Origin: Macrostomum lignano
Lineage: Eukaryota
Assembly (NCBI GenBank): GCA_002269645.1
Contig: NIVC01000677.1
Coordinates: 186,001-250,000, forward strand
Reading direction: 5' to 3'
Length of the DNA: 64,000 nucleotides
Below the pieces are notes generated by a model that was not told the DNA's origin, did no database searches, and was given only the letters and a program-made list of their open reading frames with translations. Positions 8,268-51,987 of this stretch are shown here, one piece after another (position 1 is the first letter of the stretch; every line of letters starts with the position of its first letter). A program made the translations under genes and the position numbers.

Positions 8268-11200
8268 CTAAGACTCCAGCGAGTCCACAATTTTCTGCAG
8301 GGATTCTACAGCTGCCTTCGCTGTCGGCCTGGAGTCTGGAGTGCCGCTCCAGCAGCTCTCCATCAGGTCCCACAGCTGGTCGGACATGTTGGGCAGCCGC
8401 GTCGGCCTGCAGTCCAGGGCGCCGGCGAGCAGGATGGCTCCGACACTGGGCATGATCTCGACGTACTCCGGGTGGCGCTTTCCCGTGCCTTCGCTGTGGA
8501 TTTAAATCAATGGCATCTCGCATCAATGGCTCGAGAATCTCTGCTTGCTCGTCCGCTACCTCAGGGCTACCGGAAGAGTGATCACCCACCTCTTGGACTC
8601 TCCAGGGCGACTGCGCTGCAAGATATCTGGCATTCCAACTGTCTGCAGCGGCCCCTCAGGCAGTGTAGAATTCCTCACGAGCTATTACCCCCTAATAATA
8701 ATTTACCCCATTACCTAATAACATCGCGCAATCTTTTTTGAACTTACAAAAGATACCAAAGAGCGATTCCAAGACTGAAGACGTCCGCGCTCGTGTGGTA
8801 GCTCTCGCCTCGGACCAGCTCAGGCGCAAGGTAGATTGGCGTTCCAACTAAGGTTCGGTTTACAAAGCCTGTACTCTTCACGAGTCCGAAGTCCGACAGC
8901 TTCACTTGTCTTAAATCTTCACTCACCTTAGGGTTTGTAAGGGTTTGTGGGCTGTTAAAATCATAAAAAACAGTCGGTCCACTCTCAAAAAAATGCTTAC
9001 GAGGACGTTGGCGAGTTTCACGTCTCTGTGAATCAGCTCGCTCGAGTGAAGGAACTGAAGGGCCTTCGCCAGCTCCAAGCCGATCTTCAGGCGCTGTCGA
9101 ACAGGCAGCCTGTGGCGCTGCATCAGATTCCAGGCGTCGCAGCACATCAGCTCCATGTAGATCTCTACTGTCCATCGCTTCTCATCAGGTTTGCTTTTGT
9201 GGAGCCTCACGCCGACTACGTGCACGAGATTATCATGCTCGAGAACGCTGGAATGTAACAACTTCTCATGCTATTATGAGAACTAGAAGTTATGCGATCG
9301 AAATATGTGCACTATATCTACTCAAGTATAGTAACTTACCTGCTGTGGTACACTTCCGTTGCGATATCGTCAAGACTAGGCTCGTCGGATACGATTCTCT
9401 TGGCCGCTAGCGCTGGCTCTCCGCTCTCGTTCAAAACTCGGAACACCTCACCTTGAGCTCCGGATCCGAGATTTCCTTCCGTGTCGATTCGGAACCCGCG
9501 GTACTTGTACTTGGAGATAACATCCATCGTAAGCATATGCAGTCGAGCAACTCGCGGGTATAGAGTCTTGATCTCGGATCGCTCCTTCTCGGTCAGCTTC
9601 ATACAGCTTTCGACTAGTTGCTCCGATGAAGCAATGTTGTCAAGAAACTCTCTGTGCTGCTTTTCGAACCATTCTTTCAGCGAGGTGATGAGGCACTCGA
9701 CAAGATTTTCTTTGCTGATTGTACCTGAAACAAATGAAGACAAACAGCTGATTGTGCAATGGTAGCCTAGATAATTTAATTGAAAAGCGAGTAGTTCGAC
9801 CGTTTATACCATAGAAAATGACAATGTCTGACATACAAAATATATTACTAACCTAGATACTTTTCTGCCTGATATTCCTTCCACTTTTGATCCTGGATCG
9901 GTGTGGAGATTGACAGAACGAGACCTGGATTTCTTACCATCTGTCTCACGAAATGCTTTATCCTGAATATTATAACATTCAAAGGACCCAATAAGAAGTC
10001 CTTTGACGACAACGAGTAGCCTTCGAGAAGCGTCTTCTTTAACACCTGGTACGCGGGCGTCTGTTCCACATCCTTTTCGTACTCTGCACTTTCTGCTTTA
10101 AGTCGTCGAATTCCTGTAGGCACAATCTCAGAGCTTTAAGTCGTCGAATTCCTGTAGGCACAATCTCAGATTTGAGGAAGTCGCAGAATGACGCAATATT
10201 CTGTCGTTGATGAGAGCATGAATCTCATCGACGCACTTCTTCTCAATGTCTTTCTGAGACATATCGGCTGAAATCACCGATTCCGAGTACTTCAGCGCTC
10301 TGACTTCGTCGAGAATGAGCGGCTTTCTTTCGGCGAAGAATAGACCTGCTTGTCTCAACAGCTCGTCTCGATTTTTCTCCACGATGCTCTTAGACTGCTG
10401 GTGGATCTCCTGCTCCAGGCTCTTGATTTGGTAGAGCGCCTTCTTCTTGCGCAAGTTCGACTCTTTGATGTTGGTGGCCTTGTCCATGAACAGTGTGAGA
10501 ATCTCGCTTTGAATGCGCCTCAGGCCACCACCAGAACTCACGATGAGGTTTCGAAATTGATCCTGAGCGAACTTGAGAATTCTCGTCTTGACCTCCTCGA
10601 ATCGTCTGACCCACTTTGAGTTCTCCATCTCCTTGAGAGCCTCAGGGTCGAGCTTGTTCTTCTTGATCATGAGTTCCTTTTTGCGACGGAATCGCCTCAC
10701 TTCCCAACACGAGACGCAAAGGAACTTGTTGCATGTGTCTCTGGTTTCGTTCGGGCTGATGTAGCCGAGACGCTGCAGCTTGGAGAAGACGCGCTCAGCC
10801 TTCTCTTCTTCAATCTCCTGCGCTGGTCGATTGGCTTCCTGCTCTGTGTCTTTCGAGACATCCATCTTAGTGACAAGATAGAACACCTCAGCGCCAAGCA
10901 CCGTTTTCTTAATCGTGGTTAAGTCCTTTTGGACCTGCAGTTTTAATATTCAATGCAAGAATATTGTCAAAGTTTATATTTACAGTTTTATCGTACTCAT
11001 ATATACACAGAATTCTTCTTAGGTGTTAGCTACTAGAAGCGAAAAAAGTAATAACTTCTACTTTGAATATACCAGCTCAGACAACAGCTAACTTTTTACT
11101 TTTTGGATACATATGCTCTCTCTGTTGACTATACTATGCAGTAGAAAACAGTAAAGAATGGGAAGTAGAAAAACACGTCGGGTTTTCCCTGAATGCTTCC

Positions 11201-12445
11201 ATTTCAATAACCAGCATCGATTGTCCTACGGTAGTACCGCACTGCAAGTGTCAGTTCATTGATAGAATTATGCCAGTTTGTAATGGAACTCACGGCAACG
11301 GTGATGCCCGAGTTCGAGTCGATGACGTAGATGATGATCGGTAGAAACGAGTCGATCGCCCCCAGCGTCAGCGAGTCCAGAGACGAGTTCTCGTTCAGTC
11401 CTGGCGAGTCGATGATGTCGATGCCGTGTCGCAGGAACTCGCACTTGATGCCGGCCTCGACAGTCGAGCTGATGAGCTCATCATTCTCGCGGTCCTCGTC
11501 CTTCAGCTTGACGAGGTCCTCCTCGATTGTCGGCTTCTCGAGGTACTGGACGTCTCCGATCTGCTCGCCGGTCTTGGATCGCACGAGCACGTAGATTCGG
11601 TCGGAGTAGGTGAGCCGGGTGACTCGGGCGGTGCACGGGGACTGCGACTGGGCCACGAAGGTGCCGCCTGCGAATATCGAGCGCATTTTTTGTTATGAAA
11701 TTATACATTGTCCTGGTTTTACTGGCTCAAAGATACTCATCAGCTACCGGATTTTCTTTCAAGTGAAATCTAAGAATCAAATCTAAAGTGTGGACAGGGA
11801 TTTCTAGAAGTTTGTCTTCAATTTGAGGAGAATATTATTCTCCAAATAAAATAGTATTTTTTTTAATGAAGATTTGGGCATTAATGCTTGTCAACGCATT
11901 GGGAAAAATTTTGCTAGTTTAGCTCAGATAATCTGTGTTCTTATTGGGTGAATATCCTTTGAGAGGAAAATTAACATTCATCTATATCTTGTATACTACT
12001 GGAAGTAGACAACAATTTGCTGTTCCTTCTTAGCAAATCTAAATGGATTTTATCTAAAAAACATTGAAGTGATGATAAAAGATATTGACAGCACTTGAAT
12101 TTTTTAGCAGAAGTTAAACAGCTGCTCACCAAGCAGTTCATTGATGAAGGAGCTCTTGCCCGACTTGGTCTGGCCAACAATGATGATGCACGGCTTGCTG
12201 CTGTCACTGGAACCCGTCTGGTTGCCCCTGTACAGCTGGTTGACCTTTTGCCTCACGGGTTCAAACTTTAGCGACTCTTGCAACTTTGCTGAGAATTCCG
12301 GAGACAAAGCCTTGGAAAAGCTCTCCGTTAACAGTCTCTGTGTAGTGTCCAGGTGCTCTTTGATCAGGTCCCGGTTGCTTCGGAATTCGGCAATCTCCTC
12401 GTCCAGAAAGCCGCTCGGCTGCGCCTCCGCTTGCGAGATGGCCAT
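8268..12445 (-). CDS. DSTYK-like dynamin-family GTPase-protein kinase, paralog A (exon 3 frameshifted: pseudogene, truncated allele or assembly error)
   Basis: Exons 12445-12130, 11667-11294, 10934-9853, 9724-9340, 9247-9001, 8926-8748, 8493-8268, all GT-AG with the same intron phases as B and C. GTPase motifs GQTKSGKS, DSPG, TKMD. Kinase motifs GSGAQG, AAK, HRDVKLAN, DFG, GTPIYLAPE. The frame is broken at 10089-10197. Confidence 0.85.
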
Positions 12446-14694: not shown

Positions 14695-17600
14695 ATGGCT
14701 CAGGCCAGCTCCAATGCCGTCCAGGAGGACCGGGACTTCCTGTCCAGGGAGATCAAGCGATTCTACGCCAATCGGGACCAGCTCAGAAAGACTCTGCAAG
14801 AGACACAGGAGTTCGTCGAGACCAGGTTCGCGCAGAATCTGTCAGCCGAGTTCTCCAGTCTGGTCATGCAGAACCTGCAGTTGGACAGCGTGTGGCAGCT
14901 TGTCAACCGGCTCTTCAACGGGCACCGCGGCGGCTCCGATGGCAGCAGCCGGCCGTGCATCATCATCGCTGGCCAGACCAAGTCCGGCAAGAGCTCCTTC
15001 ATTAACGAGCTGCTAGGTTGGTAGTCAAAGCAGCCGGACCTTAATGTCCTGGTCTTGATTTTGTTAAAATCAAAAAATCGTTTGTATCTTTACGAATCTC
15101 TTCATTCTTATTCTCGTTTTTGGGCTCAGTTTTTAACAAAAAATTAATAATAATTGATTACACCTGGCCGAACGGGCAGATGTGCAACCGACAGCTCAGC
15201 CGCAGCTATTGCGCGGCGCATCTGAAGGCTGCGTACGGCTGTTCAGTCCAAGGACTGGGGGGTCGCCACACACAGCCTCAATTACCCCAGCTAATGCTGG
15301 CACCCATTTTACAGCTGGGTGAACTGAAGCAATGCAGAGTTAAGTGTCTTGGTCAAGGTCAAAAATTGTTCCGAGTGGGTCGAGAATCGAACCCCCGACC
15401 ATTCAGTCGCGAGTCCAACACTCTAACCACCAGGCTACAACCCCAACTACAACTTAACCTGTTTTTCTTCCTATTTACACTATAGAATTACAAAATGTTA
15501 GCTAATCCCAAAGTTTCTTATTTTAATAAACATTTTTGTTAAAAATTAACAAAATAAAATAATCGAATATGCAGGGTGGCCCAGGTAACGCGCCTGATTT
15601 AAAGTAAAACGTTAATAACTTTTGTTATTTGCAACCAACGCGCCTGACAAAAGTTATTAACGTTTTAAATCAGGCACGTTACGTGGGCCACCCTGTATAA
15701 ATTGTGCACCCAACAAGCGCAATTCGCGTTAGTCTTCTGTTATCCAAGCCAGTTCTACAAGAAAATGAATAATTACTGCCTAGTATTTGGCTCTAATGTT
15801 ACTATGCTCGCATTCATTACTAAAACTGTATTGCTATTTAATAGACTTTTGACAGCACAGAGACTTTTCGGATAAGACATGACAAACTGCACAGTGTATT
15901 TGTAAATTCCCTGGATGCCCCTAGGCGGCACCTTCGTGGCCCAGTCGCAGTCCCCGTGCACCGCCCGAGTCACCCGGCTCACCTACTCCGACCGAATCTA
16001 CGTGCTCGTGCGATCCAAGACCGGCGAGCAGATCGGAGACGTCCAGTACCTCGAGAAGCCGACAATCGAGGAGGACCTCGTCAAGCTGAAGGACGAGGAC
16101 CGCGAGAATGATGAGCTCATCAGCTCGACTGTCGAGGCCGGCATCAAGTGCGAGTTCCTGCGACACGGCATCGACATCATCGACTCGCCAGGACTGAACG
16201 AGAACTCGTCTCTGGACTCGCTGACGCTGGGGGCGATCGACTCGTTTCTACCGATCATCATCTACGTCATCGACTCGAATTCAGGCGTTACAGTTGCTGT
16301 AAGAATGTTTCGTGATGTACTTTGATTGCATCGCATATCAAGCTGTTTACCTAGTAATTTTTCTCAACCCCTAGGTTCAGAAGGATCTGCAAACCATTCA
16401 GAAAACAGCTTCGGGAGCAGAAATTCTCTATCTAATCACCAAGATGGATGTCGCGGATCACCTTGCCGCTGAGATGGGTCGTGAGGTGGCAGAGATGGAA
16501 GCTGAAAAGGCCGATCATGTTTTCTCCAAGCTTCAGCGCCTTGGATATATTAGCAAGGATGCCACGAGGCAGTCGTGCAGGAAGTTCTTGTGCGTCTCCT
16601 GCTGGGAGGTGCGGCGATTCAGGCGTAAGAAGGAGATGATTGAGAAGAAGATGAAAAAGTCAAAGACTGCCGAATCCGGTGAGAAGCTGATGTCTGATCT
16701 CGTGAAGGAAATGGAGAACTCAAAATGGGTCCGGCAATTCGAAGAAGTAAAGCGACGAATCCTTCAATTTGCTCAAGATCAGTTCAAAAACCTGATTGTT
16801 GGAGCCGGAAGTAGCCTCAGGGCTGTGCACTGCCAGATTCTCACAATGTTCATGGACAAGGCCCACGACATTAAAGAGTCGAACCAGCGCAAGAAGAAGG
16901 CGCTCTACCAAATCAAGAGCCTGGAGCATGAGATCCACCAGCAGTCTAAGAGCATCGTGGAGCGACACCGCGGCGAGTTCCTGGCTCAGGCAAACAGATT
17001 TTTCGCAGAGAAGAAGCCTCTAATTCTCGATGAGGTGCGATCGATGAGCTATTCGGATTCGGTTATTTCTGAGGGCATGTCTCAGAGGGACATTGAGAAG
17101 AAGTGCATAGAAGAGATTCACACTCTCATTAATGACAGAATAATAGCAACTTTCAGCGACTTCTTGAGGGATAATGTTTTGAGAACTTGCTTCACAGACT
17201 TCGATGATCTTAAGGAAAAGGTTGCAGAGTACGAGAAGGACGTAGAGCAGACACCAGCCTACCAGGTGCTGAAGAAGACACTGCTCGAGGGCTACTCCTT
17301 GTCGTCCAAAGCAATCGTGCGCGGATCTGTGACCTGCTTCATTCGAAACATCGGAAGCACTTTGCGGGCACTGTTGAAGCATCCGGACATCTTCTTGGGC
17401 AAGGCTGTCCAGCACCACAAGTGGAAGGAGCATCAAGCTAGTCAATACCTTAGTAAGTCTTGCACCTTTATGCGCGTACACCTTTTTGAATGCGAACACG
17501 CCCAAATTTATTTTCTTTACAACGTCTAAATTTCAGAAAACATTGACAGAGAAAAGCTTGTCGCCTGTCTTGTATCCAGCATTGGCGAGTGGTTCGACAA

Positions 17601-19377
17601 GAGGCACTCCGACTTTTTGCACTCGATGAGCTACTCGGAAGTGCTCGTTGAGAAGTCGTATCGAATGACTGACCGCGAGCGCAAGGAAATCATCAAACTG
17701 TCGCCGATTGTGGCTCTCCTGCACATGAACGCCTTTGCCATCATCACTCGATACAAGTTTCGCAATCACCGGCTGGACCTGGACAACTGTCTGGGCTCTG
17801 GGGCCCAGGGCCGAGTCTACACAGTACTCTCGCCAACCGGAGAGCCCGTGATGGCAGCCAAGAAGATTGTCACCAACCGGGCCGGGCTGGAGGAAATCGC
17901 GGCCGAGGCCTACTACAGCAGGTGTGCGGGGATTTGAAATGCACTGTTCGTATTACAGCAGCAGAATAGCTCGGGCCAAACTACCTGGGTTCGATTACGA
18001 GTCCAGCCACAGTAATTTGGGGTTCGAGCATGGAAATTGTGACCCGAGGCGGGGACTTGACTTGCCGATTTTTGTCCATGAGGACCAATAACCAAGATAC
18101 TCAAGGGCTGAGCTGTTGTTGAGTTATAACTAGCTGCTTGCCTCCTAGCTAGCTGCGGGTGGACTGTCTTATTCGGCCAAACAGCCCCTCCATGCAATGC
18201 ATTAGCCTCAAGCGAAATCCTAGAGCTAAAATCTGAAGTCTGACTGTCATCACCCTTGCAGCGTTCTCGAGCATCCGAACATCGTTCGGGTTGTTGGCAC
18301 TGTGCTGCTTGAGAATGCCAAGCATAATGGCCAGTGGTCCGTTGAGTTATACATGGAGCTGATGCACTGCGACGCCCTCACCCTGATGGAGCAGCAGCGA
18401 CTGAGTTTGGCTAAAAGACTCTGGCTTGGGTTGCAGATTTCCAAGGCGCTGGAGTTTCTCCACTCCAGCCAGCTGATTCACCGCGATGTGAAACTGGCAA
18501 ACCTTCTGGTAAGAAGTACTGTTTAAAAGTGCCAAAAAGGTTCGATGGAATTAGGTTTAATTGATTCTTGGTGTGGTTAAAGAAAGTTGTGTTGCTATTC
18601 AACTTTTTGCGCATCTGTGCAGCTTGGCAGACTTTTAGTTGCCAACGGCAACTGCAAAATGGCCGAATGCCAGTGTTTTCCAACTATCTCTCAATGTGTT
18701 CTTACTGCCACTTGCAGGTAAACTCAGAGGCAACGGTAGCCAAGCTCTCAGACTTCGGCTTGCTAAAAGGCCAGGGTCTCGTTGGTCACACTCTGGTCGG
18801 CACTCCAATCTACTTGTCGCCGGAGCTGGTGCGGCGCGAGAACTACGGGGTCAGCACAGACATTTTTAGTTTAGGCATCGCCCTGTGGTATCTTGTGTAA
18901 GTTGGGTGTTCGACTGAGTCTACAGTATCAAAGTCTCATGACTCGAGCTAAGTTAGAGTCTCAGATGCACTTTTGTTTATTAAAAAAATTCGTTTGGTTC
19001 GTTCGGTGAAATACTACGGGATATCAGCACTCCCGACATACTACTGGATGATCCAGCATATTTCAACGTTCATAGATACACGTAAAGGATTAAAATACGA
19101 CTTAAACTTCCTTGAAGTCATTTTCCTCAAAAAACACTGCAGCGAGGGCAGCGGCCAGCATCATCCTGACTACGTGACCAACCTGAAGACCGTCGAAGAG
19201 GTGCTCGCTGCCACCTCGGAGCGCGGCTGCCGGCCTAACCGGCTGCCTGAAGCCTCCGACCAGCTGTGGCAGCTCATGGTCCGCTGCTGGGACGAGACGC
19301 CGGCCAAGCGACCGACAGCTGGGCAAGTTTCGGCCAGCCTGGAGGCTATCATAAAAGCACTGGAAGCTGGCCAGTGA
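14695..19377 (+). CDS. DSTYK-like dynamin-family GTPase-protein kinase, paralog B (intact, about 939 aa)
   Basis: Exons 14695-15016, 15925-16298, 16375-17452, 17537-17921, 18262-18508, 18718-18896, 19143-19377 sum to 2820 nt in frame. G1 GQTKSGKS, G3 DSPG, G4 TKMD. Kinase GSGAQG, AAKK, HRDVKLAN, DFG, GTPIYLSPE. C-terminal RP.RLP..SDQLWQLM..CW resembles DSTYK. Confidence 0.9.
15150..15444 (-). mobile_element. tRNA-derived CORE-like SINE (family 1) in intron 1 of paralog B
   Basis: Minus strand has a GGGGTTGTAGCCTGGTGGTTAGAG...GGTTCGATT head, then CCTTGACCAAGACACTTAACTCTGCATTGCTTCAGTTCACCCAGCTGTAAAATGGG, which resembles the MIR CORE. Further copies at 24331, 27325 and 29406. Confidence 0.85.
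15572..15695. mobile_element. 124-bp palindromic Tc1/mariner-type MITE
   Basis: TIR CAGGGTGGCCCA.GTAACG.GCCTGATTTAAA with its inverse ending CCACCCTG|TA. The element is almost entirely a hairpin. Confidence 0.8.
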
Positions 19378-20330: not shown

Positions 20331-20514
20331 GGGTCGGAGCTGGTGTGCGTTGAGTTGCACAGAACACATCTTGGTGTACACTATAGCTACCTGTCTCCGA
20401 ACCCTTTCTCTCAATCTGACAAGCTAACAGCAGCAACAATATCTGCCCCATACAGTGTACGGCAATTTTATGCATTATCTCTCTCACCTGCCTGCACAGA
20501 TCGACAAGCAGCAA

Positions 20515-23500
20515 ATGGCACAGCTATCAAACTATCTCGATCAGTTTTTGCTTAATCGTCAGAGGCTGGCCAATGCGCTTGATGAAGTGCGTTGTCTAGT
20601 GGAAGAGGCGAGGCAGATAGTAGCTGCGACATCAGCTAAGCGGTTGGAGGCGGTTGCGAGCGAGGTGGAGAAACTGCTGAGGCTGAGGGGGCGGCGTGGC
20701 AGACAAGGCGATGCGGAGTGTCGCGTCTGCTTGTTGATTGTCGGCCAGACTAAGGCCGGCAAGAGCAGCTTCATCAATGAGCTGCTGGGTGAGGAGACTG
20801 GGTACTGAGTGCTTATTGGGGCAAAGTTAATATCCTAGTTCAGCACAAAACTAAAGTATAGATACGCTCGTAAAAGAACAGCTACGTAGGTACCGTAAGG
20901 ACCCTGTCCATAGAAGAAATGTCAGCTCGAGCACCGAGTGCAATTGATAACTTGCCAGACCAGTCGGCTTGATGGGAACACAGAGAAATCCCATCCTAGA
21001 AACGCCGATTTCAGCGACACAATTCTGAGCGAATTCTGAGACTGGGAGCTCAAGGGAGGGACCTGACTGCGGTGTCCCAGCGATTTCAGTCGACCTGTTC
21101 CGAGCTTTACTTTTGTCTCCGTATCGGTTAAATCGCCTTTCATAACTTTTAAAGAATATTGATTCTGAAACACGCTACATCAATCCTCTGTCCAGGCCAG
21201 CAGGTGTTGGCCCAGTCGCAGCATCCGTGCACAAGCCAAGTGGTGCGGATCGTGCACTCAGCGGAGCCCTTCGACAGTCCCATTGAAGATCCCGAAGCCA
21301 ATGGCGAGCTCTCGCCGGCGGTCATCGGGCGGCCCAGCGAGTTTCTTCTGGCTAGCGGCCTGGATCTGGTGGACACGCCGGGCCTCAATGAGAACGCGCG
21401 ATTGGACGAGCTCACATTGAGTGCGGTGGATGCCTTCCTGCCTCTGGTTGTCTACGTTATCAATGCCAACAATGGCGTGAGCCGCATGGTGAGGGTTCTG
21501 TTTCTGTTCACATTTCCACTAAAATAACTACGCTAAAGTCACAAGCTGCAAATTGCGAGTCTATTTCAGTAATTTACTCTCGATTTAAACCCACAGGTCG
21601 AAGCCGACATTGTCAATCTGCAGACCAGGGTAGGCGGCCCGGACAAGTTATTTTACCTGGCCACGCACATGGATATTGATGATGGCGACATCTCGGCCGG
21701 GTGCGGCCGCACCAGAGAGACACTGGAGCGAGAGAAGCTACAGCGCCTGCTCGCGGGACTCCGGCGGTTAGGCTGCATCATCGAACCGGAATCTGGGAAG
21801 CCAGTGGATTATGGCAAAAATCAGTATCATAATCAGCACAGTAGCCAGCAGGTATCAGAGCCGCCATGTTCGGATCAATTTTGCTGCATTTCCAGCCGCA
21901 TCGTGGCCACAGTTAGACGGCGCCACCGACGCCAGCAGCTCCGCATGAAGCAGCTGACGATAGCTAGCGATGACGAGGCCCGCTGGCTGGAGGCCTTCCA
22001 GTTGGCGAAGTCGTCGCTTTCTTCATTCGCGAAACGTCGTCTGACTGAACTTCCGCTAGAGGCAGCCACCAGCCTCCGTCGAGCCCTGCTGGATTACTTG
22101 CACAAGGACCTGGATGAGGCGGCCTCCTTGGCTAGCGAGGAGGCCTGCTACAGGCGGCGACTGACTCTTCTGGACGCCGGGCACGCGGCGGTTTGCCTTC
22201 TAGCCGACTCAGAGTCCGCGGCATCCGGTGCAGCGACCGCACGCAATCTGGTTCGATGGCTGACTGCAGCACTGAAGCAACGGTGTAGCGAGTTGGCGAA
22301 GGCATCAGCCGGAGCTGCGGAGTCTCCTTCCAGATTGGAGCTACTAGACAGTTTAACCGACCGGATTGGCGGCGACTTCGACTTCGCTCTGCCTCGACTG
22401 GCCGACTGTTTCCAGCGCGGCGTGTCGCTGGCTAAGCAAGTTGAAGAAGCGGCTGGTGGCGAGGGCCCGCAGAAACTCGTGCCGGCCGCCACAGAAGGAT
22501 TCCGTGTGCCGGAGCGGAGCCTGCGGCGCCAATTGGCGGAACTGTTGCTTGATGATGGCTGCAAGCCGCCGAAAGGATTGTCAAGGCTGCGACTACGACC
22601 GAAGGTGCCATCGAGGGATGCAGATTTGAGACGGCTGAATGTGGAGGAGTTTCTTGGTGAGGAAGTGACAACTGTGTGTACTCAAAATTATTTAATAAAA
22701 GCACTCTGCCGTATTGTATAGTCAGTAAAACTCAGTATGCACTGTAATATTTTGGGTTTTTGAGCCTAAATAGCCAGTTCAGATTAGAACTGGCACCCAG
22801 AGTAGGAGTTTGCTTGGAAAATGGGATGGAAGCTATCTGATAGCATCTAATATCTGAGCAAAGTACAATGTAACCAACTCATACGTTTAAAGTAATTTTT
22901 TTAGCATATCGCTGAAAAGGAACTGAAAACTGCTAGAAAGCCAGCACTGATGCAGATCACTGCTACTCAACCGCAGGAAAGCTCAAACTGAATAAACTGG
23001 CCGACCGAGTCCTGCAGGACCTTCGCCGCTGGTTTGAAGAGCTGCACAGAGGAATTCTGGCGGCAGTGCAGGCCGCTGAAGACCGGGTCCAGCTCGACCT
23101 TCGAACAGCGATGGACAGACGGCGTCTCAGTCTGGCTCTGCTGCCGCTATGCTTGAAGATAAGTCTACAGCTGGACAGCGTCGCGACCGAGTACGGAGAA
23201 CTGCAGCTCTGCGGAGGCGAATCCGACGAATGGAAGCTGGTGGCATCCGGGTCTCAAGGCAGCAAGCTTTACCGCTGCGGCGGAGACCTGGCCGTCAAGG
23301 AGATGATGCTCAGCGACAGACAGCTGGGCGAGATTGCTCCCGGATTGCACGTCAGTCGGTAGGTGGCAATTTTCACTTGCCAATGCCTAGGCGGCCCATT
23401 TGACTTTATTAAAGCGCCTGAAACTCAGCTTTAAGTGCAGAATAAAGGCATGGACAGCTGAAGTACAGCTAAAAGGACCACCGTACACACTCTCAAGGTG

Positions 23501-25554
23501 TGAAAATTTCGCTACAAACCAGTGTTTTTTTACAAAATGCATCAGTGAGAAAGGAAGAAGGATAGATAGAAACATTTTGTTAGTGCAATAAATTACATCA
23601 TACCGAAAACTATATCAAATATCTGTAAATCTTAAACATCAAGCAACGCATTATCGCATACAAAATCCTCCATTTGTCATATTTAAAGAGTAAAACTCTG
23701 CATGCATACAGCATAAGTTGAACAAAGCAAGAAGGAAGCATAAAAATGGTAAAATAAACCTAATGAATTGACAAAAAAGAAAACTGTAATCTTTTGAATC
23801 CGGTATTGGCAAAATTCTCAGTGCTACTATCGTGATCCCGGAATTATGCCTGTATTTACGAGCACTTGTAAAAGATCAGAGGGTACTTAAATGTACTAAG
23901 TTCTTGATGTCTTGATAACTTTAAAAAATACGATCTACTTCGTGTATGAAATGATGTTAAAGCCACTTGAGCTTGCATATTTTTAGCGGACTGCGCGTTA
24001 AACGCGTCCGACTCTCGCCCCACGCGACCCCCGGTTCGATTCCGTGCGCGGCCAATTGCCTGGGGGTCGTCATGATGGCCAACCCCCGCAGAGAGTGTAC
24101 ATGCCTGACGATTAGAAAGTCAAAGGGCCGCTGTACACCCTGTGTTAGCGTGTGTATGAGTGGGCGCCTGCGTACAGTATGGGCGCGCTTGCATGTGCTC
24201 AGGACTCAGCGGGATGGGCAGAATCGTCTCAGCACTGGTTGTGTGGGACGATGTCGCCGAATTCATTGCGCCGGGGTGCCCCCAGCCCCCCAACGAGTAT
24301 TTAGATGTATTTATTTGAGGCATAGGCAAGGGGGTTGTAGCCTAGTGGTTAGAGCGCCGGATTCGCGACTGAAAGGTCGGGGGTTCGATTCTTAACCACT
24401 CGGAACATTTTGTGTCCTTGAGAGAGACACAACTCTGCAGTACTTCAGTTCACCCAGCTGTAAATTCTTTAAAATCAGCATTAGCTGGGGTAACTGAGGG
24501 TGTGCGAGGCGACCCCCAATCTTTGTACTGAACAGCCGTACGCAGTCCTCAGATGCTCCGCGCAATAGCTGCGGCTGAGCTGTCGGTTGCGCATATGGCC
24601 CAAAAGGCAGGTGTAATAACTTATTAATTAATATTATTAAATTATAGGCAGCAACTGATCAGAACCTAAATTTAACTGTTTATCAAATTTTCTCAACGCT
24701 TTCAACGATTCCTCATTGGAATGAGCTAACAAATTTTGCTTTACTTCTAATTTCCAAATACAGTGAAATGAACGAGAATCTAGTCCACATCGCTGGCCTG
24801 CGGTTGTACAGACTGACCGCACCTGATGTCTGGAGACTGCAGTTGTACATGCCATTCATGGCTGACGGCCGCAATCTGCTGGATTTCCTGGCCCTGCAAC
24901 CCTCGCTGCGAAAGCGGCTGGCCGTTGGCTTGGCAACAGCGGACGCGCTGGCGAAGCTGCACTCGGAGAGCCGACTGGCGCACGGAAATCTGCACGCCGC
25001 CAATGTGTTTGTAAGCAGGAAGCGGGGAGGTCGGGCAAGGAACAGTTGAAGTTGATTGCTTTGAGTTTTTGAAGGCAAAATGAAGTTTTTGTTGGAAAAC
25101 CATCTCAGGTGATTCGGTCGGGCACCGAGTCGGCGGTGGTGAAGCTGTCCGACCTCGGCCAGCAATTGTTGCCAGACAAGGAGTTGCCAGATGGCTCTAA
25201 ACCACCAGGCTGCATGCTCTTCAGTCAGTTGGTTAGCCAAGATGTCTGCTGTTTGGGACGGATTCTACAGAGTCTGACGTGAGTTCGTCACCGTTGCATG
25301 TGATGATTTCCTTCGATGCTATTAGGCTTGGTAACGTTTCATTTTCATTTTTAATCAGATCTGGTCCTGCAGTACACGCAGTGCCAGTGGACTTCGAGCT
25401 GACAGCAGAAGCATCAGCTGATCTGGACCGCCTTCTGCTGGAGTGCCAGCCGGATCCCCTGGCACCAGCGGGCTACACGGAGTCGAGCTGCAGCCTGACA
25501 GCTGGCCAAGTAGCTAACCGGTTGCGAGCCCTGCTGCCAACGCCTGCGGACTGA
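20515..25554 (+). CDS. DSTYK-like GTPase-pseudokinase, paralog C (about 873 aa)
   Basis: Exons 20515-20788, 21196-21488, 21597-22656, 22977-23358, 24764-25010, 25109-25278, 25359-25554 sum to 2622 nt in frame, with the same intron phases as A and B. GTPase motifs GQTKAGKS, DTPG, THMD. In the kinase, HRD is replaced by HGN, DFG by DLG, the alphaC Glu is replaced and there is no APE motif. Confidence 0.85.
23984..24318 (+). mobile_element. tRNA-derived SINE (family 2)
   Basis: A-box-like TAGCGGACTGCG and B-box GGTTCGATTCC. The central ATGGCCAACCCC...GTGTACATGCCT.ACGAT...AGGGCCGCTGTACAC block is shared with 43215-43540. Confidence 0.7.
24331..24640 (+). mobile_element. CORE-like SINE (family 1), full length
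   Basis: Same head, core and 3' region as 15150-15444; ends in an AT-rich tail. Confidence 0.85.
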
Positions 25555-25639: not shown

Positions 25640-26340
25640 AATAAGATTCTTCGTGTCCTCCCTGTCCCCACCTCGTGTCCTCCCTGTCCCCACATCGTGT
25701 CCTCCCTGTCCCCACCTCGTGTCCTCCCTGTCCCCACCTCGTGTCCTCCCTGTCCCCACCTCGTGTCCTCCCTGTCCCCACCTCGTGTCCTCCCTGTCCC
25801 CACCTCGTGTCCTCTCTGTCCCCACATCGTGTCCTCCCTGTCCCCACCTCGTGTCCTCTCTGTCCCCACCTCGTGTCTTCCCTATCCCCACCGATCGTGT
25901 CCTCTCCATCTCACCGTGTCCTCTCCGTCCCACCCTGTGTCCTCTCCGTCCCACCCTGTGTCCTCTCCGTCCCACCCTGTGTCCTCTCCGTCCCACCCTG
26001 TGTCCTCTCCGTCCCACCCTGTGTCCTCTCCGTCCCACCCTGTGTCCTCTCCGTCCCACCCTGTGTCCTCTCCGTCCCACCCTGTGTCCTCTCCGTCCCA
26101 CCCTGTGTCCTCTCCGTCCCACCCTGTGTCCTCTCCGTCCCACCCTGTGTCCTCTCCGTCCCACCCTGTGTCCTCTCCGTCCCACCCTGTGTCCTCTCCG
26201 TCCCACCCTGTGTCCTCTCCGTCCCACCCTGTGTCCTCTCCGTCCCACCCTGTGTCCTCTCCGTCCCACCCTGTGTCCTCTCCGTCCCACCCTGTGTCCT
26301 CTCCGTCCCAACCTGTGTCCTCCCTGTCCCCTCGTGTCCT
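25640..26340. repeat. Pyrimidine-rich minisatellite: 22-bp units (CTCGTGTCCTCCCTGTCCCCAC) followed by about 18 perfect 21-bp units (CCTGTGTCCTCTCCGTCCCAC)
   Basis: Read directly; accounts for all ORFs called between 25558 and 26395. Confidence 0.95.
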
Positions 26341-27324
26341 CCTTTTGACACGAAGTACAGCGTATTCTATGCTATGCCAAAATAAAGTAATTTAGATGTG
26401 CTTTCATTTTTAGTTTCAATTATCGTGCAGCCAAGTTTTCTCTGTTATATGTACTTTTATGCGCGAACTCTGTGGCTTGTGACGTCATAGTCATAGAGTA
26501 TTCATTCAACGTCGTGCTTACCTCACAAAAGCTTCTCGTGCAACCTTAATTGAGACTATATGAAGACAGCCGATGCTGGAAAATGACTTCATCAGATAGA
26601 AAAACTCGTTCACCGTGATCTACAAAATGTTTTCTGTATAGAAAATAGTCATGGCCTGCTCAGCAGGCCAAAGCCGCAAGCTACGGTTATGTAGACTTAT
26701 TTTTCGAAACAGCATCGTAATAATTCGCAAGCCATAGACCATGAGCTATGGCCTGCAGAGCAGGCCACCCGCATCCTCGGGGTTAAACAGTTGACAATGC
26801 AAGAATCAGGTTGGTAGCTCTGTATGGCATAAGCTACTGCAAAGCAATAATTGGAACTGGACAACCAAGAGCATGGGTGTGGCAGCCTTTTGTGTATCGT
26901 ATGTAGAGCTTATCGAAATGTTTTCGTCGTATCTTCCCTTTTCTAATGTCTCTAAGACGGAGAATTCTTCCTAATCAACTAGATGGCTTCCCAATGCAGT
27001 CGCAGTCGAGCACGCGCCCAGGCAAAGCAATGGCAGGACTGCAGGTCTGCAGCTCAGCCGCGCCCAAAATCCCAGTTCACGGACGTACAAAGCGGCACGC
27101 GAGCCGCCTGAGAAGGGTGGATCAATTCGGTTCATCTGCAGCGTCGACAGCTGAATTCGAACCGTTGAAAGACTCGAATAGAAGAAGACAATCTCTAGAA
27201 AAGCTAATTAGCATTGGTTGATTACTGAATTTTTGCAGTGCGTACCAATGCGTGTCGTTCAAACTTGACTGTATCGGATTCAGGCATAAGTGTTAATGGA
27301 TTTTACCGTATAGATTAATGGACA

Positions 27325-37292: not shown

Positions 37293-40200
37293 ATGTCGCG
37301 CAAGTTCACATTTAAATCTTTTAAGTCAGGCGCCAGCGGTGACGCAGGCAATCGAAGTATATTGGACTTTACACTGACCTCGGATGCTGCTAGTAGCGAG
37401 CGGCCAGTAGGGCAGCAGAAGCAGACGTTAGTCAGCAAAGCAACGTCTAACGCATCCAGCTCAAAGCCAAGCAGTCTCGGCAATCCGTTTAAACTGGTGC
37501 CAACAGCCAAGGTGCCGCCAACTCCCGTGCACCATCAGCAACAGTCGGCCGGCGGAGAGGCCTCCCGGCCAACTCTGCTGTCAAGCGTCTATGCCAGAGA
37601 CTCACAGGTGGTGGACCTTCTTGCCAATCCAACATCCCAGCGGGCCCAGCAGCAGCTGTCCGCTTCAGACGCCGCGGCGATGCCTGAGCCGTCGGGCTAC
37701 GAAGATGACGCCGATTTCATCGACGATTTTGATGACGAATTCGACTTTCGAATGCCGCTATCCATCAATCGATCCGACGTGCTTTCGTCTACCACCCAGG
37801 CCGCGCCGACAACGCCCGCTACTTCGGCGGCTGCTGTTACTGCTGCCGCACCGACAGCCGCCGCCAATTCGTTGAAGACGGCATCGAACTTCCAGCCTGT
37901 CAGCGCTGGCAACCAGCAGCAGTTGGATGCCGACGATTCTCTGCCAACGCCAATTCCAAGCACCGGCCGCAAGCGCCAGCGAATTCAGTCGGATTCGGAT
38001 GACGACCAAAACGTCGGCGGCCATCGAATTGAGTTTCAAATTGACAACGACGACGACGATGATGACTTTGTTGTGGACGATGACTCCGCCGATGTGGTCG
38101 AGGAGGAGGACAACTCGCCGCCCGACAACAACGACAGTACAGGCGATGCGGAGATCCGCCTGACGAAGCGAGTGTACAAGTCGATGCGCGGCATCTGCGT
38201 GGCGGTTCGCGACTTGCCCTCCGGCCAGCTTTTCGACGCGTTCGGCCAGTCAGCTACGGACGTCTTCCGCCTGCTTGGAGAGCTGCGCGGCCATCCAGAC
38301 AGCGACGCGTCAGCTTCGACTTCAACCGTTGCTAAGCAACAGACGCCTAAAAGCGCGACAGAGGGTAAACAAAAGCCGAAGCCGGCTCAAGCGACCGCGG
38401 CTGCCGCCACCCTGCCAGAGCCGGAGCGGAAGCCGCTGTTCAAGCGGACCCGCGGCGCCATCGACTCCAGTGGACTGGACTTTGGCATCAACGCCTCATT
38501 TTCGATGACAGCGTCAGCTTCGGCCAGCTCTGTTGTTGGCGCATCTAAACCTGCGGTAGCTGCTGCCGTCGCTGATAAGCCGCCAATGCCGGCAATTCGT
38601 GCCTCGCTCGATTTCGACTGTCCAACCTCGAAGCCTTCGATGTTGTCAGTCAACTCGGCTGAGCCTCCCAAACCAAAAAAGACGCTGACAGCGGCCGAAG
38701 CCACCGCCGGCGATGACTACGTGCCGTTAGAGGCGCGTCAATCGAAATGGACCTCGGCCGTGGCTAACGCCGCCGTGCCCGCCCACGCCGGAGCCGCGGC
38801 CACGAAGCAGCCGGACCACTCGGCTGAATTCGGCGGCGAGGCCTATCCGCACTCGGACCGGGTGCGGCTCGCCTTCCGAGAGGTGTTCGGCTTGAAAGAG
38901 TTCCGTCGCAACCAGCTGCAGGCTATTAACGCCTGCTTGCTTGGCCACGACACGTTTGTGCTGATGCCTACGGGCGGCGGCAAGAGCCTGTGCTATCAGC
39001 TGCCAGCTGTTGTCACTGACGGCTGCACCGTGGTGGTGTCCCCTCTGCTGTCGCTCATCACCGATCAAGTTAATAAGCTGACGTCTCTAGGCATTAGAAC
39101 CTACCAGCTGACTGGAGACATATCGCCGCAGCAGCAGGATCAGGTGTTTGCCATGCTCACTAATTCTAGCGGCTGTCAGGTGCAGCTGTTATATGTGACG
39201 CCTGAAAAGATTAGCCAATCTGATAAACTGCAGCGGTGCTTCTCTGTTCTGTATCAGCGCGGCAAATTAGACAGATTTGTTATTGACGAGGCCCACTGCG
39301 TCAGCCAATGGGGCCACGATTTTAGGCAGGATTATCGAAATTTAAATCGGCTAAGAACTTCTTTTCCAAATGTGCCAATGATGGCTTTAACTGCGACGGC
39401 TACGCCTCAGGTAGGCCCTGTTGTGCTTCTAAATGTAGTGTATTATACTTACAGTAGTCCTATAAATTGTAAATAATAGTTTAATTACTTCGCTCAAAAC
39501 AGTGCGGCGAAATCTCAAGATACTAGATTAACTACATGTTAAGTTGTGACAAAATGGAGCGTCTACTCTGATTTCAGTTTTTAGGGTAGGTTAGGGTTAG
39601 GGACGAATGTTGGATTTAGGTTAGGGTTATTATGGTATGTTGTGTTTAGGTTGGGGTAGGTTGAATTTAGGTCAGAGTAGACTAGGTTTAGGGTAGGTTG
39701 GATTTAGATTAGAGTTAGGGTAGGTTAGGTTTAAATTAGAGTTAGGGTAGGTTGGGTTTAAATTAGAGTTAGGGTAGATTGTGCTTAGGTTAGGGTAGGT
39801 TGGGTTTAGGTTAGGGTAGGTTGGGTTTAGGTTAGGGTAGGTTGGGTTTAGGTTAGGGTAGGTTGGGTTTAGGTTAGGGTAGGTTGGGTTTAGGTTAGGG
39901 TAGGTTGGGTTTAGGTTGGGTTTAGGTTAGGGTAGGTTGGGTTTAGGTTAGGGTAGGTTGGGTTTAGGTTAGGGTAGGTTGGGTTTAGGTTAGGGTAGGT
40001 TGGGTTTAGGTTAGGGTAGGTTGGGTTTAGGTTGGGTTTAGGTTAGGGTAGGTTGGGTTTAGGTTAGGGTAGGTTGGGTTTAGGTTAGGGTAGGTTGGGT
40101 TTAGGTTAGGGTAGGTTGGGTTTAGGTTAGGGTAGGTTGGGTTTAGGTTAGGGTAGGTTGGGTTTAGGTTAGGGTAGGTTGGGTTTAGGTTAGGGTAGGT

Positions 40201-50008: not shown

Positions 50009-51987
50009 TATGATGTACTCACACATTTCTTAGTGCTGCGACCCCAAGAAAATGGTCACGCAACCCACAGGTTGAGAACAACTGGTCTAACTTATCTGCA
50101 ACTTGGGCTTGCTGACTTAGTAGTACCCCACACTTTGTAGCTCTCTTGCTCTGAAATGATAGCAATGCAAGCTAAGTTATAACATCAACATGTAATATAG
50201 CATTAACCGATGATGCAACCGGCTCAACGTGGGCAGCCGGTCTGGCAGGACGACCCCGCGATTCAGGCAGCGAGGGAAGATCTGGAGAGGCTCCGCTTGA
50301 GCAGGCGACCAACCCGCGAGGCAGAGGCAGCTCTGGTGGCTGTCTACCTGCAGCGCCAACAAGCGGCTGTCGATGAAACCATTTAGGCTGTCTCTGCCGC
50401 TGGGCCCGATGCCAGAGGGCGCGTGGCCTGGTCCGCCATCAACGCTCTGACGGGGCGAAAGCGGCGCAATCCGCTGAACCTGGCTGGTGACACTCCGGAT
50501 GAGCGCAGGAATGAGCTGCGCGAGTTCTTCGCCGCCATCGTCAACGCGCCGTCACCCCCGCTGCCAGACAGTCTGACACTGCCGCCGGAGACGCCGTTGC
50601 CGGCAGAGGAGAGTTTCAGCGTAGCCCCAGTCAACGCAGCCGACGTTGTCAAGCTCGCCCAGCAGTCACCGGGCGGGAAAGCGCTGGGTCCGGACGAGGT
50701 GCCCATCGAGGCGCTGCGCATCCCCTGTGTGGCCGCTGAGGTCGCCAGAGTGATGAACCGCGTGCTCTTCGGTGAGGCGGCGCCCAACGAATGGACCACG
50801 GCGCACATCGTCGCTGTTCCAAAGAAGCCGGGCACCACTATGCTTGAAGACCATCGAGGCATCTGCCTTCAGTCCTGTGCAGCGAAGCTGTTCAACCGGA
50901 TGCTGCTTTCGCGGTTGCAGCCAGTGCTGGATCCGTACCTGCGCCCAGAGCAGAACGGGTTCCGGCCCCATCGCGGCACAGTGGCGCAGATCCTGGCTCT
51001 TCGCCGAGTCATCGAGGAGGCGCGGATTCACCAGTCGATCCTGATTCTAATCTTTATCGATTTCAAGAAGGCATTCGACTCGGTTGTCAGAGCCGTGCTT
51101 CCAATGGTGCTCCGCGCGTACAACGTGCCTGAGCAGCTGATCTCCGCCATCATGGCGATGTACCGTGATACGTCAGCTGCTGTGACAACACCGGACGGCC
51201 TATCGGACTCCTTTAAGACATCCTCCGGAGTGCTTCAGGGAGATACGCTGGCGCCGTTCCTGTTCGTCCTGGTGCTCGACTGGGTGCTGCGGACTGCTCT
51301 ACCTACCGACGACGACGGCTTTCTGCTGCGGCGACGCGTGGGTCGACGTCAACCGGAGAAGCGGCTCAGCGTGCTTGGCTACGCCGACGACCTCGCCCTG
51401 CTGTCTTCGACCGTCGAGGGCGCCCAACGGCAGCTGGACAGGCTAGTTGCCGTTGCGGCGAGCGTCGGCCTGGTGGTCAACACGCAGAAGACCGTTGTGC
51501 TCTGCGTGCCGGACGACATCGAGGCTGAAATTTTCTGCCGAGGCGCTGACGGGCAGGCGACCGAGCTGCCGCGATGTCAGCAGTTCGTCTACCTCGGCGG
51601 TCTGGTTCCAGACGCTCGCGAGGACCTGCGACGCCACCGCGGGCTTGCCTGGGCTGCCTTTCGTTCTGTGAGGGCAGTCCTGCAGTCCGAGGCCCTACCG
51701 GACCGCCAGAGGGCGGCGCTGTTCCAGGCGGTGATCGAGACCGTCCTGCTCTACAACGCCGAGACCTAGACGCTGAGGGACTCACTCAAACAGCAAGTCG
51801 ATGCGGCGCACGCTGGCCTGCTGCGCGTCGCCTTCAACATCGGTGTCGAGCGAGTCAACAACGCGGCACTCTATCGCCGCGCTGGCCTGCCACGTCCAAG
51901 CGATCTACTGCGCCGTCGGCGACTCCAGCTCGCAGGCCATCTCATCCGCGCCGAGTCGTACTGCCCACAGCCGGTGCAGGAGGTGCT

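What the first reader, a model, noticed from the sequence alone, without database searches (positions are those of the whole stretch)
20515..25554. Paralog C is an intact-frame GTPase-pseudokinase
Seen: the frame and all splice sites are preserved, but catalytic-loop HRDVKLAN becomes HGNLHAAN (catalytic Asp lost) and DFG becomes DLG. The alphaC Glu is lost (EIAAE to EIAPG), the Gly loop is degenerate (ASGSQGSK) and the GTPIYLxPE activation segment is absent; the beta3 Lys is kept (AVK). GTPase G1 and G3 are kept, but G4 TKMD becomes THMD. Established: loss of the HRD Asp marks a pseudokinase, and pseudokinases often regulate active paralogs allosterically or act as decoys. Inference: C is a maintained regulator or sensor for A/B, not a decaying copy.
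Basis: partly seen in the sequence, partly recalled or inferred. Interest (0 to 1): 0.7.

Follow-up and report, generated by a model that had tools for sequence, protein, structure and literature searches.

The report
Flatworm DSTYK paralog with dead kinase
This is an expressed, intact seven-exon gene of the flatworm Macrostomum lignano: a fast-evolving extra copy of the little-understood kinase DSTYK that keeps its dynamin-like GTPase motifs but has lost the catalytic residues of its kinase domain. It is a real pseudokinase, but an ordinary lineage-specific one, and whether it is still under selection is unresolved.

Summary
Window 20515-25554 (+) holds a seven-exon, 873-codon open frame (paralog C). 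All introns are GT-AG and in the same phases as active paralog B. C is GenBank BOX15_Mlig005846g1 of Macrostomum lignano, an RNA-seq-derived model identical to mine.

Pfam finds Dynamin_N but no kinase domain. An AlphaFold model of the C-terminal domain (pLDDT 77) still matches kinase folds.

The family is DSTYK, a dynamin-like GTPase, helical region and kinase. C is the earliest-branching, longest-branch M. lignano paralog, and I found no ortholog elsewhere.

- For maintenance: the long open frame, transcription, intact GTPase motifs, and only one indel, in frame, in exons 3-7.
- Against: between C and its duplicate-locus copy, dN/dS is 0.85 (25 nonsynonymous, 10 synonymous). That is indistinguishable from neutral and significantly above A and B (0.12-0.17). 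Only the GTPase part looks constrained (0.16).

Regulation of A/B is untested, and A is frame-broken in this assembly. GTPase-pseudokinase relatives recur across invertebrate DSTYK-like genes. Verdict: new member of a known kind, of modest interest.

The parts
20475..20499 (+). Polypyrimidine tract plus AG acceptor just upstream of the C start codon. It is probably the spliced-leader trans-splice (or cis-splice) acceptor that defines the mRNA 5' end.
   Evidence: The sequence is ttatctctctcacctgcctgcacag|atc. The GenBank partial CDS starts at 20503. Older ML2 gene models splice into exactly this acceptor, giving ...TAGQ|IDKQQM. The trans-splicing itself is inferred; no reads were seen.
20515..20788 (+). 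C exon 1: start codon, N-terminal helix and the GTPase G1 P-loop GQTKAGKSS (20743-20769).
   Evidence: The donor is G|GTGAGG, phase 1.
21196..21488 (+). C exon 2: GTPase G2 (HPCTS, 21222-21236) and G3 (DTPG, 21372-21383). It is about 30 residues shorter than in A/B.
21597..22656 (+). C exon 3: G4 variant THMD (21663-21674) and most of the helical middle region.
   Evidence: The middle region is only 20% identical to B.
22977..23358 (+). C exon 4: end of the helical region and the kinase-like N-lobe. It holds the Gly loop ASGSQGS (23243-23263), beta3 AVK (23291-23299), and alphaC EIAPG with the Glu lost (23330-23344).
24764..25010 (+). C exon 5: beta4 through the catalytic loop HGNLHAAN (24981-25004). 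The catalytic Asp is Asn and the loop Lys is His, while the Mg-binding Asn is kept.
25109..25278 (+). C exon 6: DLG (25151-25159) with the Asp kept, a degenerate activation segment without GTPxYxxPE, and alphaF DVCCLGRIL (25241-25267).
   Evidence: The only C/C' indel in exons 3-7 is here and is 3 nt long.
25359..25554 (+). C exon 7: degenerate C-lobe end, with the CW..RP block deleted, and the stop codon.
14695..19377 (+). Paralog B (BOX15_Mlig014911g1): seven exons, 939 aa, Dynamin_N plus Pkinase, with all catalytic motifs intact. It is the active reference copy, 1.1 kb upstream of C on the same strand.
8268..12445 (-). Paralog A: seven exons with canonical kinase motifs, but the reading frame is broken in exon 3 (about 10190-10060) in this assembly.
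   Evidence: No CDS is annotated for it in the part of the contig listed, window 10503-35554.

Best explanation
Paralog C is a transcribed, protein-coding, lineage-specific duplicate of the Macrostomum lignano DSTYK genes. Their ancestral architecture is an N-terminal dynamin-like GTPase, a long helical region and a C-terminal protein kinase.

In C the GTPase module is conserved. The helical region and the kinase domain have diverged rapidly, and the kinase has lost the residues needed for phosphotransfer. It keeps the bilobal fold and the three residues that usually hold nucleotide and metal: the beta3 Lys, the catalytic-loop Asn and the DxG Asp. So C is a GTPase-pseudokinase.

The most likely mode of action is inferred, not shown. 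C would work through its GTPase and scaffold, for example by GTP-dependent G-domain pairing with itself or with the active paralogs, and not by phosphorylating substrates.

Selection on C today is weak outside the GTPase domain. That fits a protein with few sequence constraints, or one whose constraint relaxed after the recent genome duplication.
For: Shown:
- Intact 873-codon frame with conserved splice sites and phases.
- Identity to an RNA-seq-derived GenBank model.
- Pfam Dynamin_N at 56.6 bits against a cut-off of 27, and no Pkinase hit at E <= 0.1.
- The isolated C-terminal domain gives only a sub-threshold PK_Tyr_Ser-Thr hit (18.9 bits against 23.1). All its weak PDB sequence hits are kinases or kinase-fold proteins.
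- The AlphaFold2 domain model has pLDDT 77 and pTM 0.77, and gives more than 1900 Foldseek kinase matches at probability 1.0.
- K58, H151, N158, D175, G177 and D205 of the domain sit in invariant or near-invariant kinase columns, while the HRD Asp column holds Asn.
- Per-domain identity of C to B is 50% in the GTPase, 20% in the middle and 32% in the kinase. For another old paralog against B the values are 58, 37 and 53%.
- dN/dS between C and C' is 0.16 in the GTPase, 1.28 in the middle and 1.40 in the kinase-like part. GTPase against the rest gives Fisher p = 0.043.
- Exons 3-7 carry one indel, in frame, against eight events in introns 2-6, seven of them not multiples of 3.
- In the NJ tree C is sister to the other M. 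lignano paralogs (100% bootstrap) inside the canonical DSTYK clade (86%), with branch length 1.09 against 0.60-0.74.
- The nearest non-flatworm relatives are all named DSTYK or DSTYK-like.
Against: - Overall dN/dS of 0.85 is statistically indistinguishable from 1. It is significantly above A and B, as expected for a copy that is drifting.
- No ortholog of C was found outside M. lignano, so there is no long-term dN/dS.
- The duplicate-locus copy C' carries 1-nt indels in exons 1-2. They are probably assembly errors: exon 2 has five indels and no substitutions, and the older ML2 models read these exons intact. They are not proven to be errors.
- The G4 Lys-to-His change is unique in the family, and its effect on GTP binding is unknown.
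- The full-length AlphaFold model was unusable (pLDDT 43).
- The domain model was guided by an alignment made of kinases.
- No expression level, protein evidence or interaction data were available.
Confidence: 0.6

Rival explanations
1. C is a decaying copy. It was functional for a long time but has been drifting neutrally since the recent genome duplication made it redundant. The frame is still open only because too few mutations have accumulated.
For: - dN/dS is 0.85 overall and at least 1.3 over the middle and kinase-like parts. Substitutions are spread evenly over codon positions (12:13:10), and the rate is significantly higher than in A and B.
- With 35 substitutions, the chance of acquiring no stop under neutrality is about 0.30, so the open frame since the duplication says little.
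- C' has frame-breaking indels in exons 1-2 as assembled and is annotated only from exon 3 onward.
Against: - The GTPase part shows 2 nonsynonymous to 4 synonymous changes (dN/dS 0.16).
- Exons 3-7 have a single, in-frame indel, against eight indel events in introns 2-6.
- The gene is transcribed and correctly spliced according to the RNA-seq-based annotation.
- The older ML2 models read exons 1-2 intact in C'-like haplotypes.
Confidence: 0.22
2. C is a dedicated allosteric regulator, decoy or sensor of the active paralogs A/B. It would act through kinase-pseudokinase pairing, as HER3 does with EGFR-family kinases or JAK JH2 does with JH1.
For: - C lies 1.1 kb downstream of B on the same strand, in one cluster.
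- Older gene models even join B and C into one transcript.
- The residue pattern is of the nucleotide-binding pseudokinase type: catalytic Asp to Asn, alphaC Glu lost, beta3 Lys and DxG Asp kept. From my own knowledge it recalls the HGN catalytic loop of JAK JH2 domains.
Against: - No interaction, co-expression or co-evolution evidence was obtainable.
- The pseudokinase part is the least constrained part of C (dN/dS 1.4). That is not what a conserved docking surface predicts, though an arms-race decoy could evolve fast.
- A is frame-broken in this locus, and B' is truncated in the duplicate locus.
Confidence: 0.13
3. C is still an active but atypical kinase that uses a non-canonical catalytic arrangement.
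For: The beta3 Lys, the catalytic-loop Asn and the DxG Asp are retained. From general knowledge, some proteins first labelled pseudokinases show weak activity.
Against: - The catalytic base Asp, the catalytic-loop Lys, the alphaC Glu, the first Gly of the Gly loop, the whole P+1/APE segment and the alphaH-alphaI Arg block are all lost together.
- The Pfam kinase models fall below threshold.
Confidence: 0.05

Closest known systems
DSTYK (dual serine/threonine and tyrosine protein kinase; 'Dusty', also called RIPK5 in databases)
   Same: - The nearest relatives outside Macrostomum are all named DSTYK or DSTYK-like. They come from Tubulanus, Ptychodera, Saccoglossus, Lingula, Branchiostoma and Nematostella.
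- They have the same length (about 900 aa) and the same order of Dynamin_N, helical region and kinase domain.
- C nests inside the canonical DSTYK clade.
   Different: - C has lost the catalytic kinase residues that canonical DSTYKs keep: HRDIK, D[FL]G and GTPxxxxPE.
- The reviews I could read describe DSTYK only by its kinase domain and say little is known of its function (PMC10492769, PMC9573974).
- None of the papers found links DSTYK to a dynamin-like GTPase domain.
DSTYK-like GTPase-pseudokinase paralogs of other invertebrates (e.g. Lingula XP_013414054, Lineus XP_064623290, Ptychodera XP_070553788/793/798, Glandiceps, Branchiostoma XP_019629833, Nematostella XP_032222785)
   Same: They have intact G1-G4 GTPase motifs, degenerate HRD, DFG and APE motifs, and weak or sub-threshold Pfam kinase scores.
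   Different: They form separate, older branches. C groups with the M. lignano kinase-active paralogs at 100% bootstrap, so its kinase degenerated independently. These relatives are, as far as I could find, uncharacterised.
Nucleotide-binding pseudokinase domains such as JAK JH2 and HER3/ErbB3 (comparison from my own knowledge, not tested here)
   Same: The catalytic Asp is replaced by Asn (an HGN- or HRN-type loop) and the alphaC Glu is lost or changed, while the beta3 Lys and the DxG Asp are retained. JAK2 and TYK2 JH2 structures are among the Foldseek matches.
   Different: There is no sequence relationship beyond the kinase superfamily. C also lacks the whole activation-segment P+1/APE block and is fused to a dynamin-like GTPase.
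ROCO proteins / LRRK2 (a GTPase and a kinase in one polypeptide)
   Same: They share the concept of a G domain and a kinase domain in one chain, with the G domain thought to control the kinase or scaffold. This is an analogy only.
   Different: The GTPase class differs: Roc is Ras-like, while here it is Pfam Dynamin_N. The domain order and the intervening domains also differ. C is not a member of this family.

Membership tests
DSTYK family | The closest relatives in other phyla are DSTYK proteins, and C falls inside their clade. | tested here: met
   The exhaustive phmmer search with C returns M. lignano paralogs first, then proteins named DSTYK or DSTYK-like. In the NJ tree the canonical-DSTYK clade that includes C has 86% bootstrap. 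This was an NJ tree only; no ML tree was made.
DSTYK family | Architecture: an N-terminal region, a long helical middle and a C-terminal 'dusty' kinase domain, about 900 aa in all. | tested here: met
   C is 873 aa and collinear with B, A' and the DSTYKs of other phyla over its whole length. Intron positions and phases are identical to B.
DSTYK family | A catalytically competent kinase domain (HRD, DFG, APE). | tested here: not met
   C has HGNLHAAN, DLG and no APE. It is therefore a degenerate member by descent, not a functional DSTYK kinase.
Pseudokinase | A protein-kinase fold is retained. | tested here: met
   The AlphaFold2 domain model has pLDDT 77 and pTM 0.77. Foldseek gives more than 1900 kinase matches at E <= 0.001, with TM-scores of 0.5-0.6. 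There is a sub-threshold Pfam PK_Tyr_Ser-Thr hit. Caveat: the input alignment consisted of kinases.
Pseudokinase | At least one of the essential catalytic residues (VAIK Lys, HRD Asp, DFG Asp) is missing. | tested here: met
   The HRD Asp is replaced by Asn, while the Lys and the DxG Asp are kept.
Pseudokinase | Lack of phosphotransfer activity. | not testable with these tools
   This needs an in vitro kinase assay.
Dynamin-superfamily GTPase | Pfam Dynamin_N above the gathering threshold, with G1 (GxxxxGKS), G2 Thr and G3 (DxxG) present. | tested here: met
   Dynamin_N scores 56.6 bits against a cut-off of 27. GQTKAGKSS, PCT and DTPG are present.
Dynamin-superfamily GTPase | The G4 motif (N/T)KxD. 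| tested here: inconclusive
   C has THMD: the Asp is kept and the Lys is replaced by His, uniquely among the 30 aligned family members. The consequence for guanine binding is unknown.
Maintained (selected) gene, as opposed to a pseudogene | dN/dS significantly below 1. | tested here: not met
   C against C' gives 0.85, with an interval of about 0.4-2.0. Only the GTPase segment is low (0.16, from six substitutions). The test covers only the short time since the duplication.
Maintained (selected) gene, as opposed to a pseudogene | Transcribed and correctly spliced. | tested here: met
   The evidence is indirect. The GenBank model is identical to mine and comes from a purely RNA-seq and transcriptome-based annotation. 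In that annotation, novel transcripts below 0.5 RPKM that did not overlap the de novo transcriptome were discarded. I did not inspect reads.

The most novel reading that the evidence does not exclude
DSTYK is ancestrally a dynamin-like GTPase fused to a kinase. Across invertebrates the kinase half has degenerated repeatedly while the GTPase half stays intact, and C is one independent case. This would imply that the conserved core activity of the family is GTP-driven assembly or membrane remodelling. The pseudokinase paralogs, such as C, would then co-assemble through their G domains with kinase-active paralogs and tune them.
Probability: 0.2. Interest if true: 0.6.

Novelty: new member of a known kind. 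Interest (0 to 1): 0.35.

Why it matters
DSTYK is a disease-linked human kinase. It is associated with urinary-tract malformations and with spastic paraplegia SPG23, as cited in PMC10492769. Its mechanism is poorly understood, and the reviews I could read describe only its kinase domain.

The flatworm cluster shows the family's full architecture with a canonical dynamin-type GTPase. It also provides a natural kinase-dead, GTPase-intact paralog next to active ones, in an animal where RNAi and transgenesis work.

That makes it possible to separate GTPase-dependent from kinase-dependent functions. For C itself the significance is modest. It is a lineage-specific, weakly constrained duplicate that is already present in GenBank as a hypothetical protein.

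Tried and rejected
1. Full-length AlphaFold2 of C with 12 M. lignano sequences gave pLDDT 43 and pTM 0.26, which is unusable. I did not use it for fold search.
2. The third word-indexed homolog search, run with a family profile, was swamped by generic kinases. It returned no further DSTYKs.
3. I looked for gene-level expression data by searching for Mlig005846 and sister IDs. The full-text library and the supplements of four M. lignano papers gave no hits.
4. I looked for C orthologs in other species and found none in either protein collection. This is uninformative, because no transcriptome-derived (Logan) proteins appear even for M. lignano's own A and B.
5. I considered whether C belongs to the older GTPase-pseudokinase DSTYK-like clades. 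I rejected this from the tree and from the hit order.
6. I considered whether the C' frameshifts show that the C type is a pseudogene. I judged them probable unpolished PacBio errors: exon 2 has five single-base indels and no substitutions, and the ML2 models read through these exons. This is not proven.
7. Rfam found nothing in the window.
8. The 2006 'Dusty' paper (PMC4277547) is not held in the library.


Full report
**What is there.** The window is genomic DNA of the flatworm Macrostomum lignano. Proteins I assembled from it match GenBank entries at 100% identity: BOX15_Mlig014911g1 (paralog B) and BOX15_Mlig005846g1 (paralog C). Both lie on contig NIVC01000677.1.

Three related genes form a cluster.
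- A lies on the minus strand at 12445-8268.
- B lies on the plus strand at 14695-19377.
- C lies on the plus strand at 20515-25554.

I rebuilt all three models from stop-free segments and splice sites. B is a clean seven-exon gene of 939 aa. C is a clean seven-exon gene of 873 aa. Its six introns are GT-AG and sit in the same phases as in B (1,0,1,2,0,2).

**Motif check.** Pfam finds Dynamin_N plus Pkinase in B. In C it finds Dynamin_N only, with no kinase hit at E <= 0.1.

- HRDVKLAN becomes HGNLHAAN.
- DFG becomes DLG.
- The alphaC Glu is lost (EIAPG).
- The Gly loop reads ASGSQGS.
- The beta3 Lys is kept.
- The GTPxYxxPE segment and the CW..RP block are gone.
- G1, G2 and G3 are kept.
- G4 TKMD becomes THMD.

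The G4 His is unique: all 28 other family members in the alignment have Lys there (only C and C' have His). C also keeps the catalytic-loop Asn and the DxG Asp, and it lacks about 30 residues between G2 and G3.

The isolated C-terminal domain still gives a sub-threshold PK_Tyr_Ser-Thr hit of 18.9 bits. Its weak PDB sequence hits are all kinases or kinase-fold proteins. An AlphaFold2 model of that domain has pLDDT 77 and pTM 0.77. It matches more than 1900 kinase structures, including JAK2 and TYK2 JH2. One caveat applies: the input alignment was made of kinases. The full-length model was unusable.

**Family.** The exhaustive search with C found only M. lignano proteins below E = 1e-30. The next hits are proteins of about 900 aa from nemerteans, hemichordates, a brachiopod, amphioxus and Nematostella. 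All of those I looked up are named DSTYK or DSTYK-like except two nemertean entries listed as 'uncharacterized protein'.

So these genes are DSTYK homologs. In invertebrates the family has a canonical dynamin-type G1-G4 in front of the kinase. I found no paper that links DSTYK to a dynamin-like GTPase domain.

Many invertebrate DSTYK-like paralogs keep the GTPase motifs but have degenerate HRD, DFG and APE motifs. The GTPase-pseudokinase architecture is therefore recurrent in this family.

In an NJ tree C is sister to all other M. lignano paralogs with 100% bootstrap. It sits inside the canonical DSTYK clade (86%) on a long branch, 1.09 against 0.60-0.74. Its kinase therefore degenerated independently of the older pseudokinase clades.

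A further M. lignano paralog on the same contig, BOX15_Mlig008353g1, has HQDVALSN and PFG. It is a second, younger kinase degeneration.

**Is it maintained?** Three lines argue for a real gene.
1. The frame. A random substitution in C creates a stop with probability 0.034, so the frame could not survive the divergence from A/B (about 28% identity) without selection.
2. Expression. The GenBank annotation of this assembly was built only from RNA-seq and transcript assemblies, with ORFs called by TransDecoder (PMC5730564). Its model for C is identical to mine. Its 5' end lies just after a polypyrimidine tract and AG acceptor at 20498-99. The older ML2 models use the same acceptor.
3. Domain pattern. 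C is 50% identical to B in the GTPase, 20% in the middle region and 32% in the kinase-like part. Another old paralog scores 58, 37 and 53% against B.

A duplicate locus, NIVC01000921.1 (L001/L002), is collinear with the window at 97-99% identity. It allows a direct selection test.

| Pair | Nonsynonymous | Synonymous | dN/dS |
|---|---|---|---|
| C vs C', whole gene | 25 | 10 | 0.85 (interval about 0.4-2.0) |
| C vs C', GTPase part | 2 | 4 | 0.16 |
| C vs C', middle region | 11 | 3 | 1.28 |
| C vs C', kinase-like part | 12 | 3 | 1.40 |
| A vs A' | 6 | 14 | 0.12 |
| B vs B' | 3 | 5 | 0.17 |

- The C/C' changes are spread 12:13:10 over the three codon positions.
- The difference between C and A+B is significant (Fisher p = 0.0025).
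- The difference between the GTPase part of C and the rest is marginal (p = 0.043).
- Exons 3-7 of C and C' differ by a single, in-frame indel. Introns 2-6 carry eight indel events, seven of them not multiples of 3.
- C' has single-base indels in exons 1-2. Exon 2 has five of them and no substitutions, which looks like unpolished long-read error. The older ML2 models with C'-type residues read those exons intact.

**Conclusion.** C is a genuine, expressed GTPase-pseudokinase of the DSTYK family. Long-term coding selection is clear. Recent constraint is detectable only on the GTPase part, and overall the gene cannot be told apart from neutral drift since the duplication. It is weakened a little because the pseudokinase part is the least constrained region of C. 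In addition, A is frame-broken in this locus and B' is truncated in the duplicate locus.

My preferred mechanism is that C acts through its GTPase and scaffold, possibly by G-domain pairing with the active paralogs. This is an inference from how dynamin-superfamily GTPases are known to work. It is not a result obtained here.

Noticed in passing
window 10060-10190 (minus strand, paralog A exon 3): Paralog A has a broken reading frame. Relative to the intact duplicate-locus copy A' (P0004), it carries two 1-nt deletions and a 38-bp tandem duplication, which give a stop after ...QEFDDLKL. Elsewhere A looks constrained (14 synonymous to 6 nonsynonymous changes against A'). No CDS is annotated for it in the part of this contig that was listed. 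This is either a very recent pseudogenisation or an assembly error.
   Followed up: partly
window 11669-11289 (A exon 2) and 15923-16303 (B exon 2): The second exons of the inverted paralogs A and B are 98.2% identical over 381 nt. Their other exons are 68-79% identical. This is a gene-conversion tract confined to exon 2, which encodes GTPase G2-G3.
   Followed up: partly
L001 about 4996 (corresponds to window 15783-16472): The duplicate locus lacks about 690 bp covering B exon 2 and the start of exon 3, so B' is annotated as a 653-aa, kinase-only protein. In the window A is broken and in the duplicate locus B' is broken, so the damage looks reciprocal, or this is an assembly collapse at the converted repeat.
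   Followed up: no
same contig NIVC01000677.1, outside the window (protein P0188, BOX15_Mlig008353g1): Another A-like DSTYK paralog has intact GTPase motifs but HQDVALSN instead of HRDVKLAN, PFG instead of DFG (metal-binding Asp lost), and GSAAQC in the Gly loop. It is a second, younger pseudokinase in the same genome.
   Followed up: partly
window 19326/19327 and 20498-20500: Older ML2 gene models (UniRef proteins P0002 and P0003) fuse B and C. They use a weak donor inside B's last exon and the acceptor just upstream of the C start codon. This hints at read-through or polycistronic transcription of B and C, or it is a prediction artefact.
   Followed up: no
proteins P0002 and P0003 compared with window C and L001 C': The C parts of the ML2 models are mosaics of C-type and C'-type variant residues. 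This indicates at least three C-type haplotypes or copies, with exchange among them.
   Followed up: partly
window 25653-26341: A 21-nt minisatellite of about 32 copies, 94% matching, starts 100 nt after the stop codon of C. It creates long spurious ORFs on both strands.
   Followed up: no
window 39630-40345: A 21-nt minisatellite built from TTAGGG-like units (TTAGGGTAGGTTGGGTTTAGG, about 33 copies). It is an interstitial telomere-like repeat.
   Followed up: no
window 52024-56829 (minus) and 50423-51769 (plus): A 1601-aa ORF whose translation looks like that of a non-LTR retrotransposon (reverse transcriptase and RNase H-like regions, judged by eye and not searched), plus a second reverse-transcriptase fragment. 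Together they account for the 62-67% GC block.
   Followed up: no
window 23359-24763 (C intron 4) and about 15140-15444 (B intron 1): A repeat of about 300 bp is shared in opposite orientations between an intron of C and an intron of B (about 84% identity, seen through the duplicate locus). It is probably a dispersed element.
   Followed up: no
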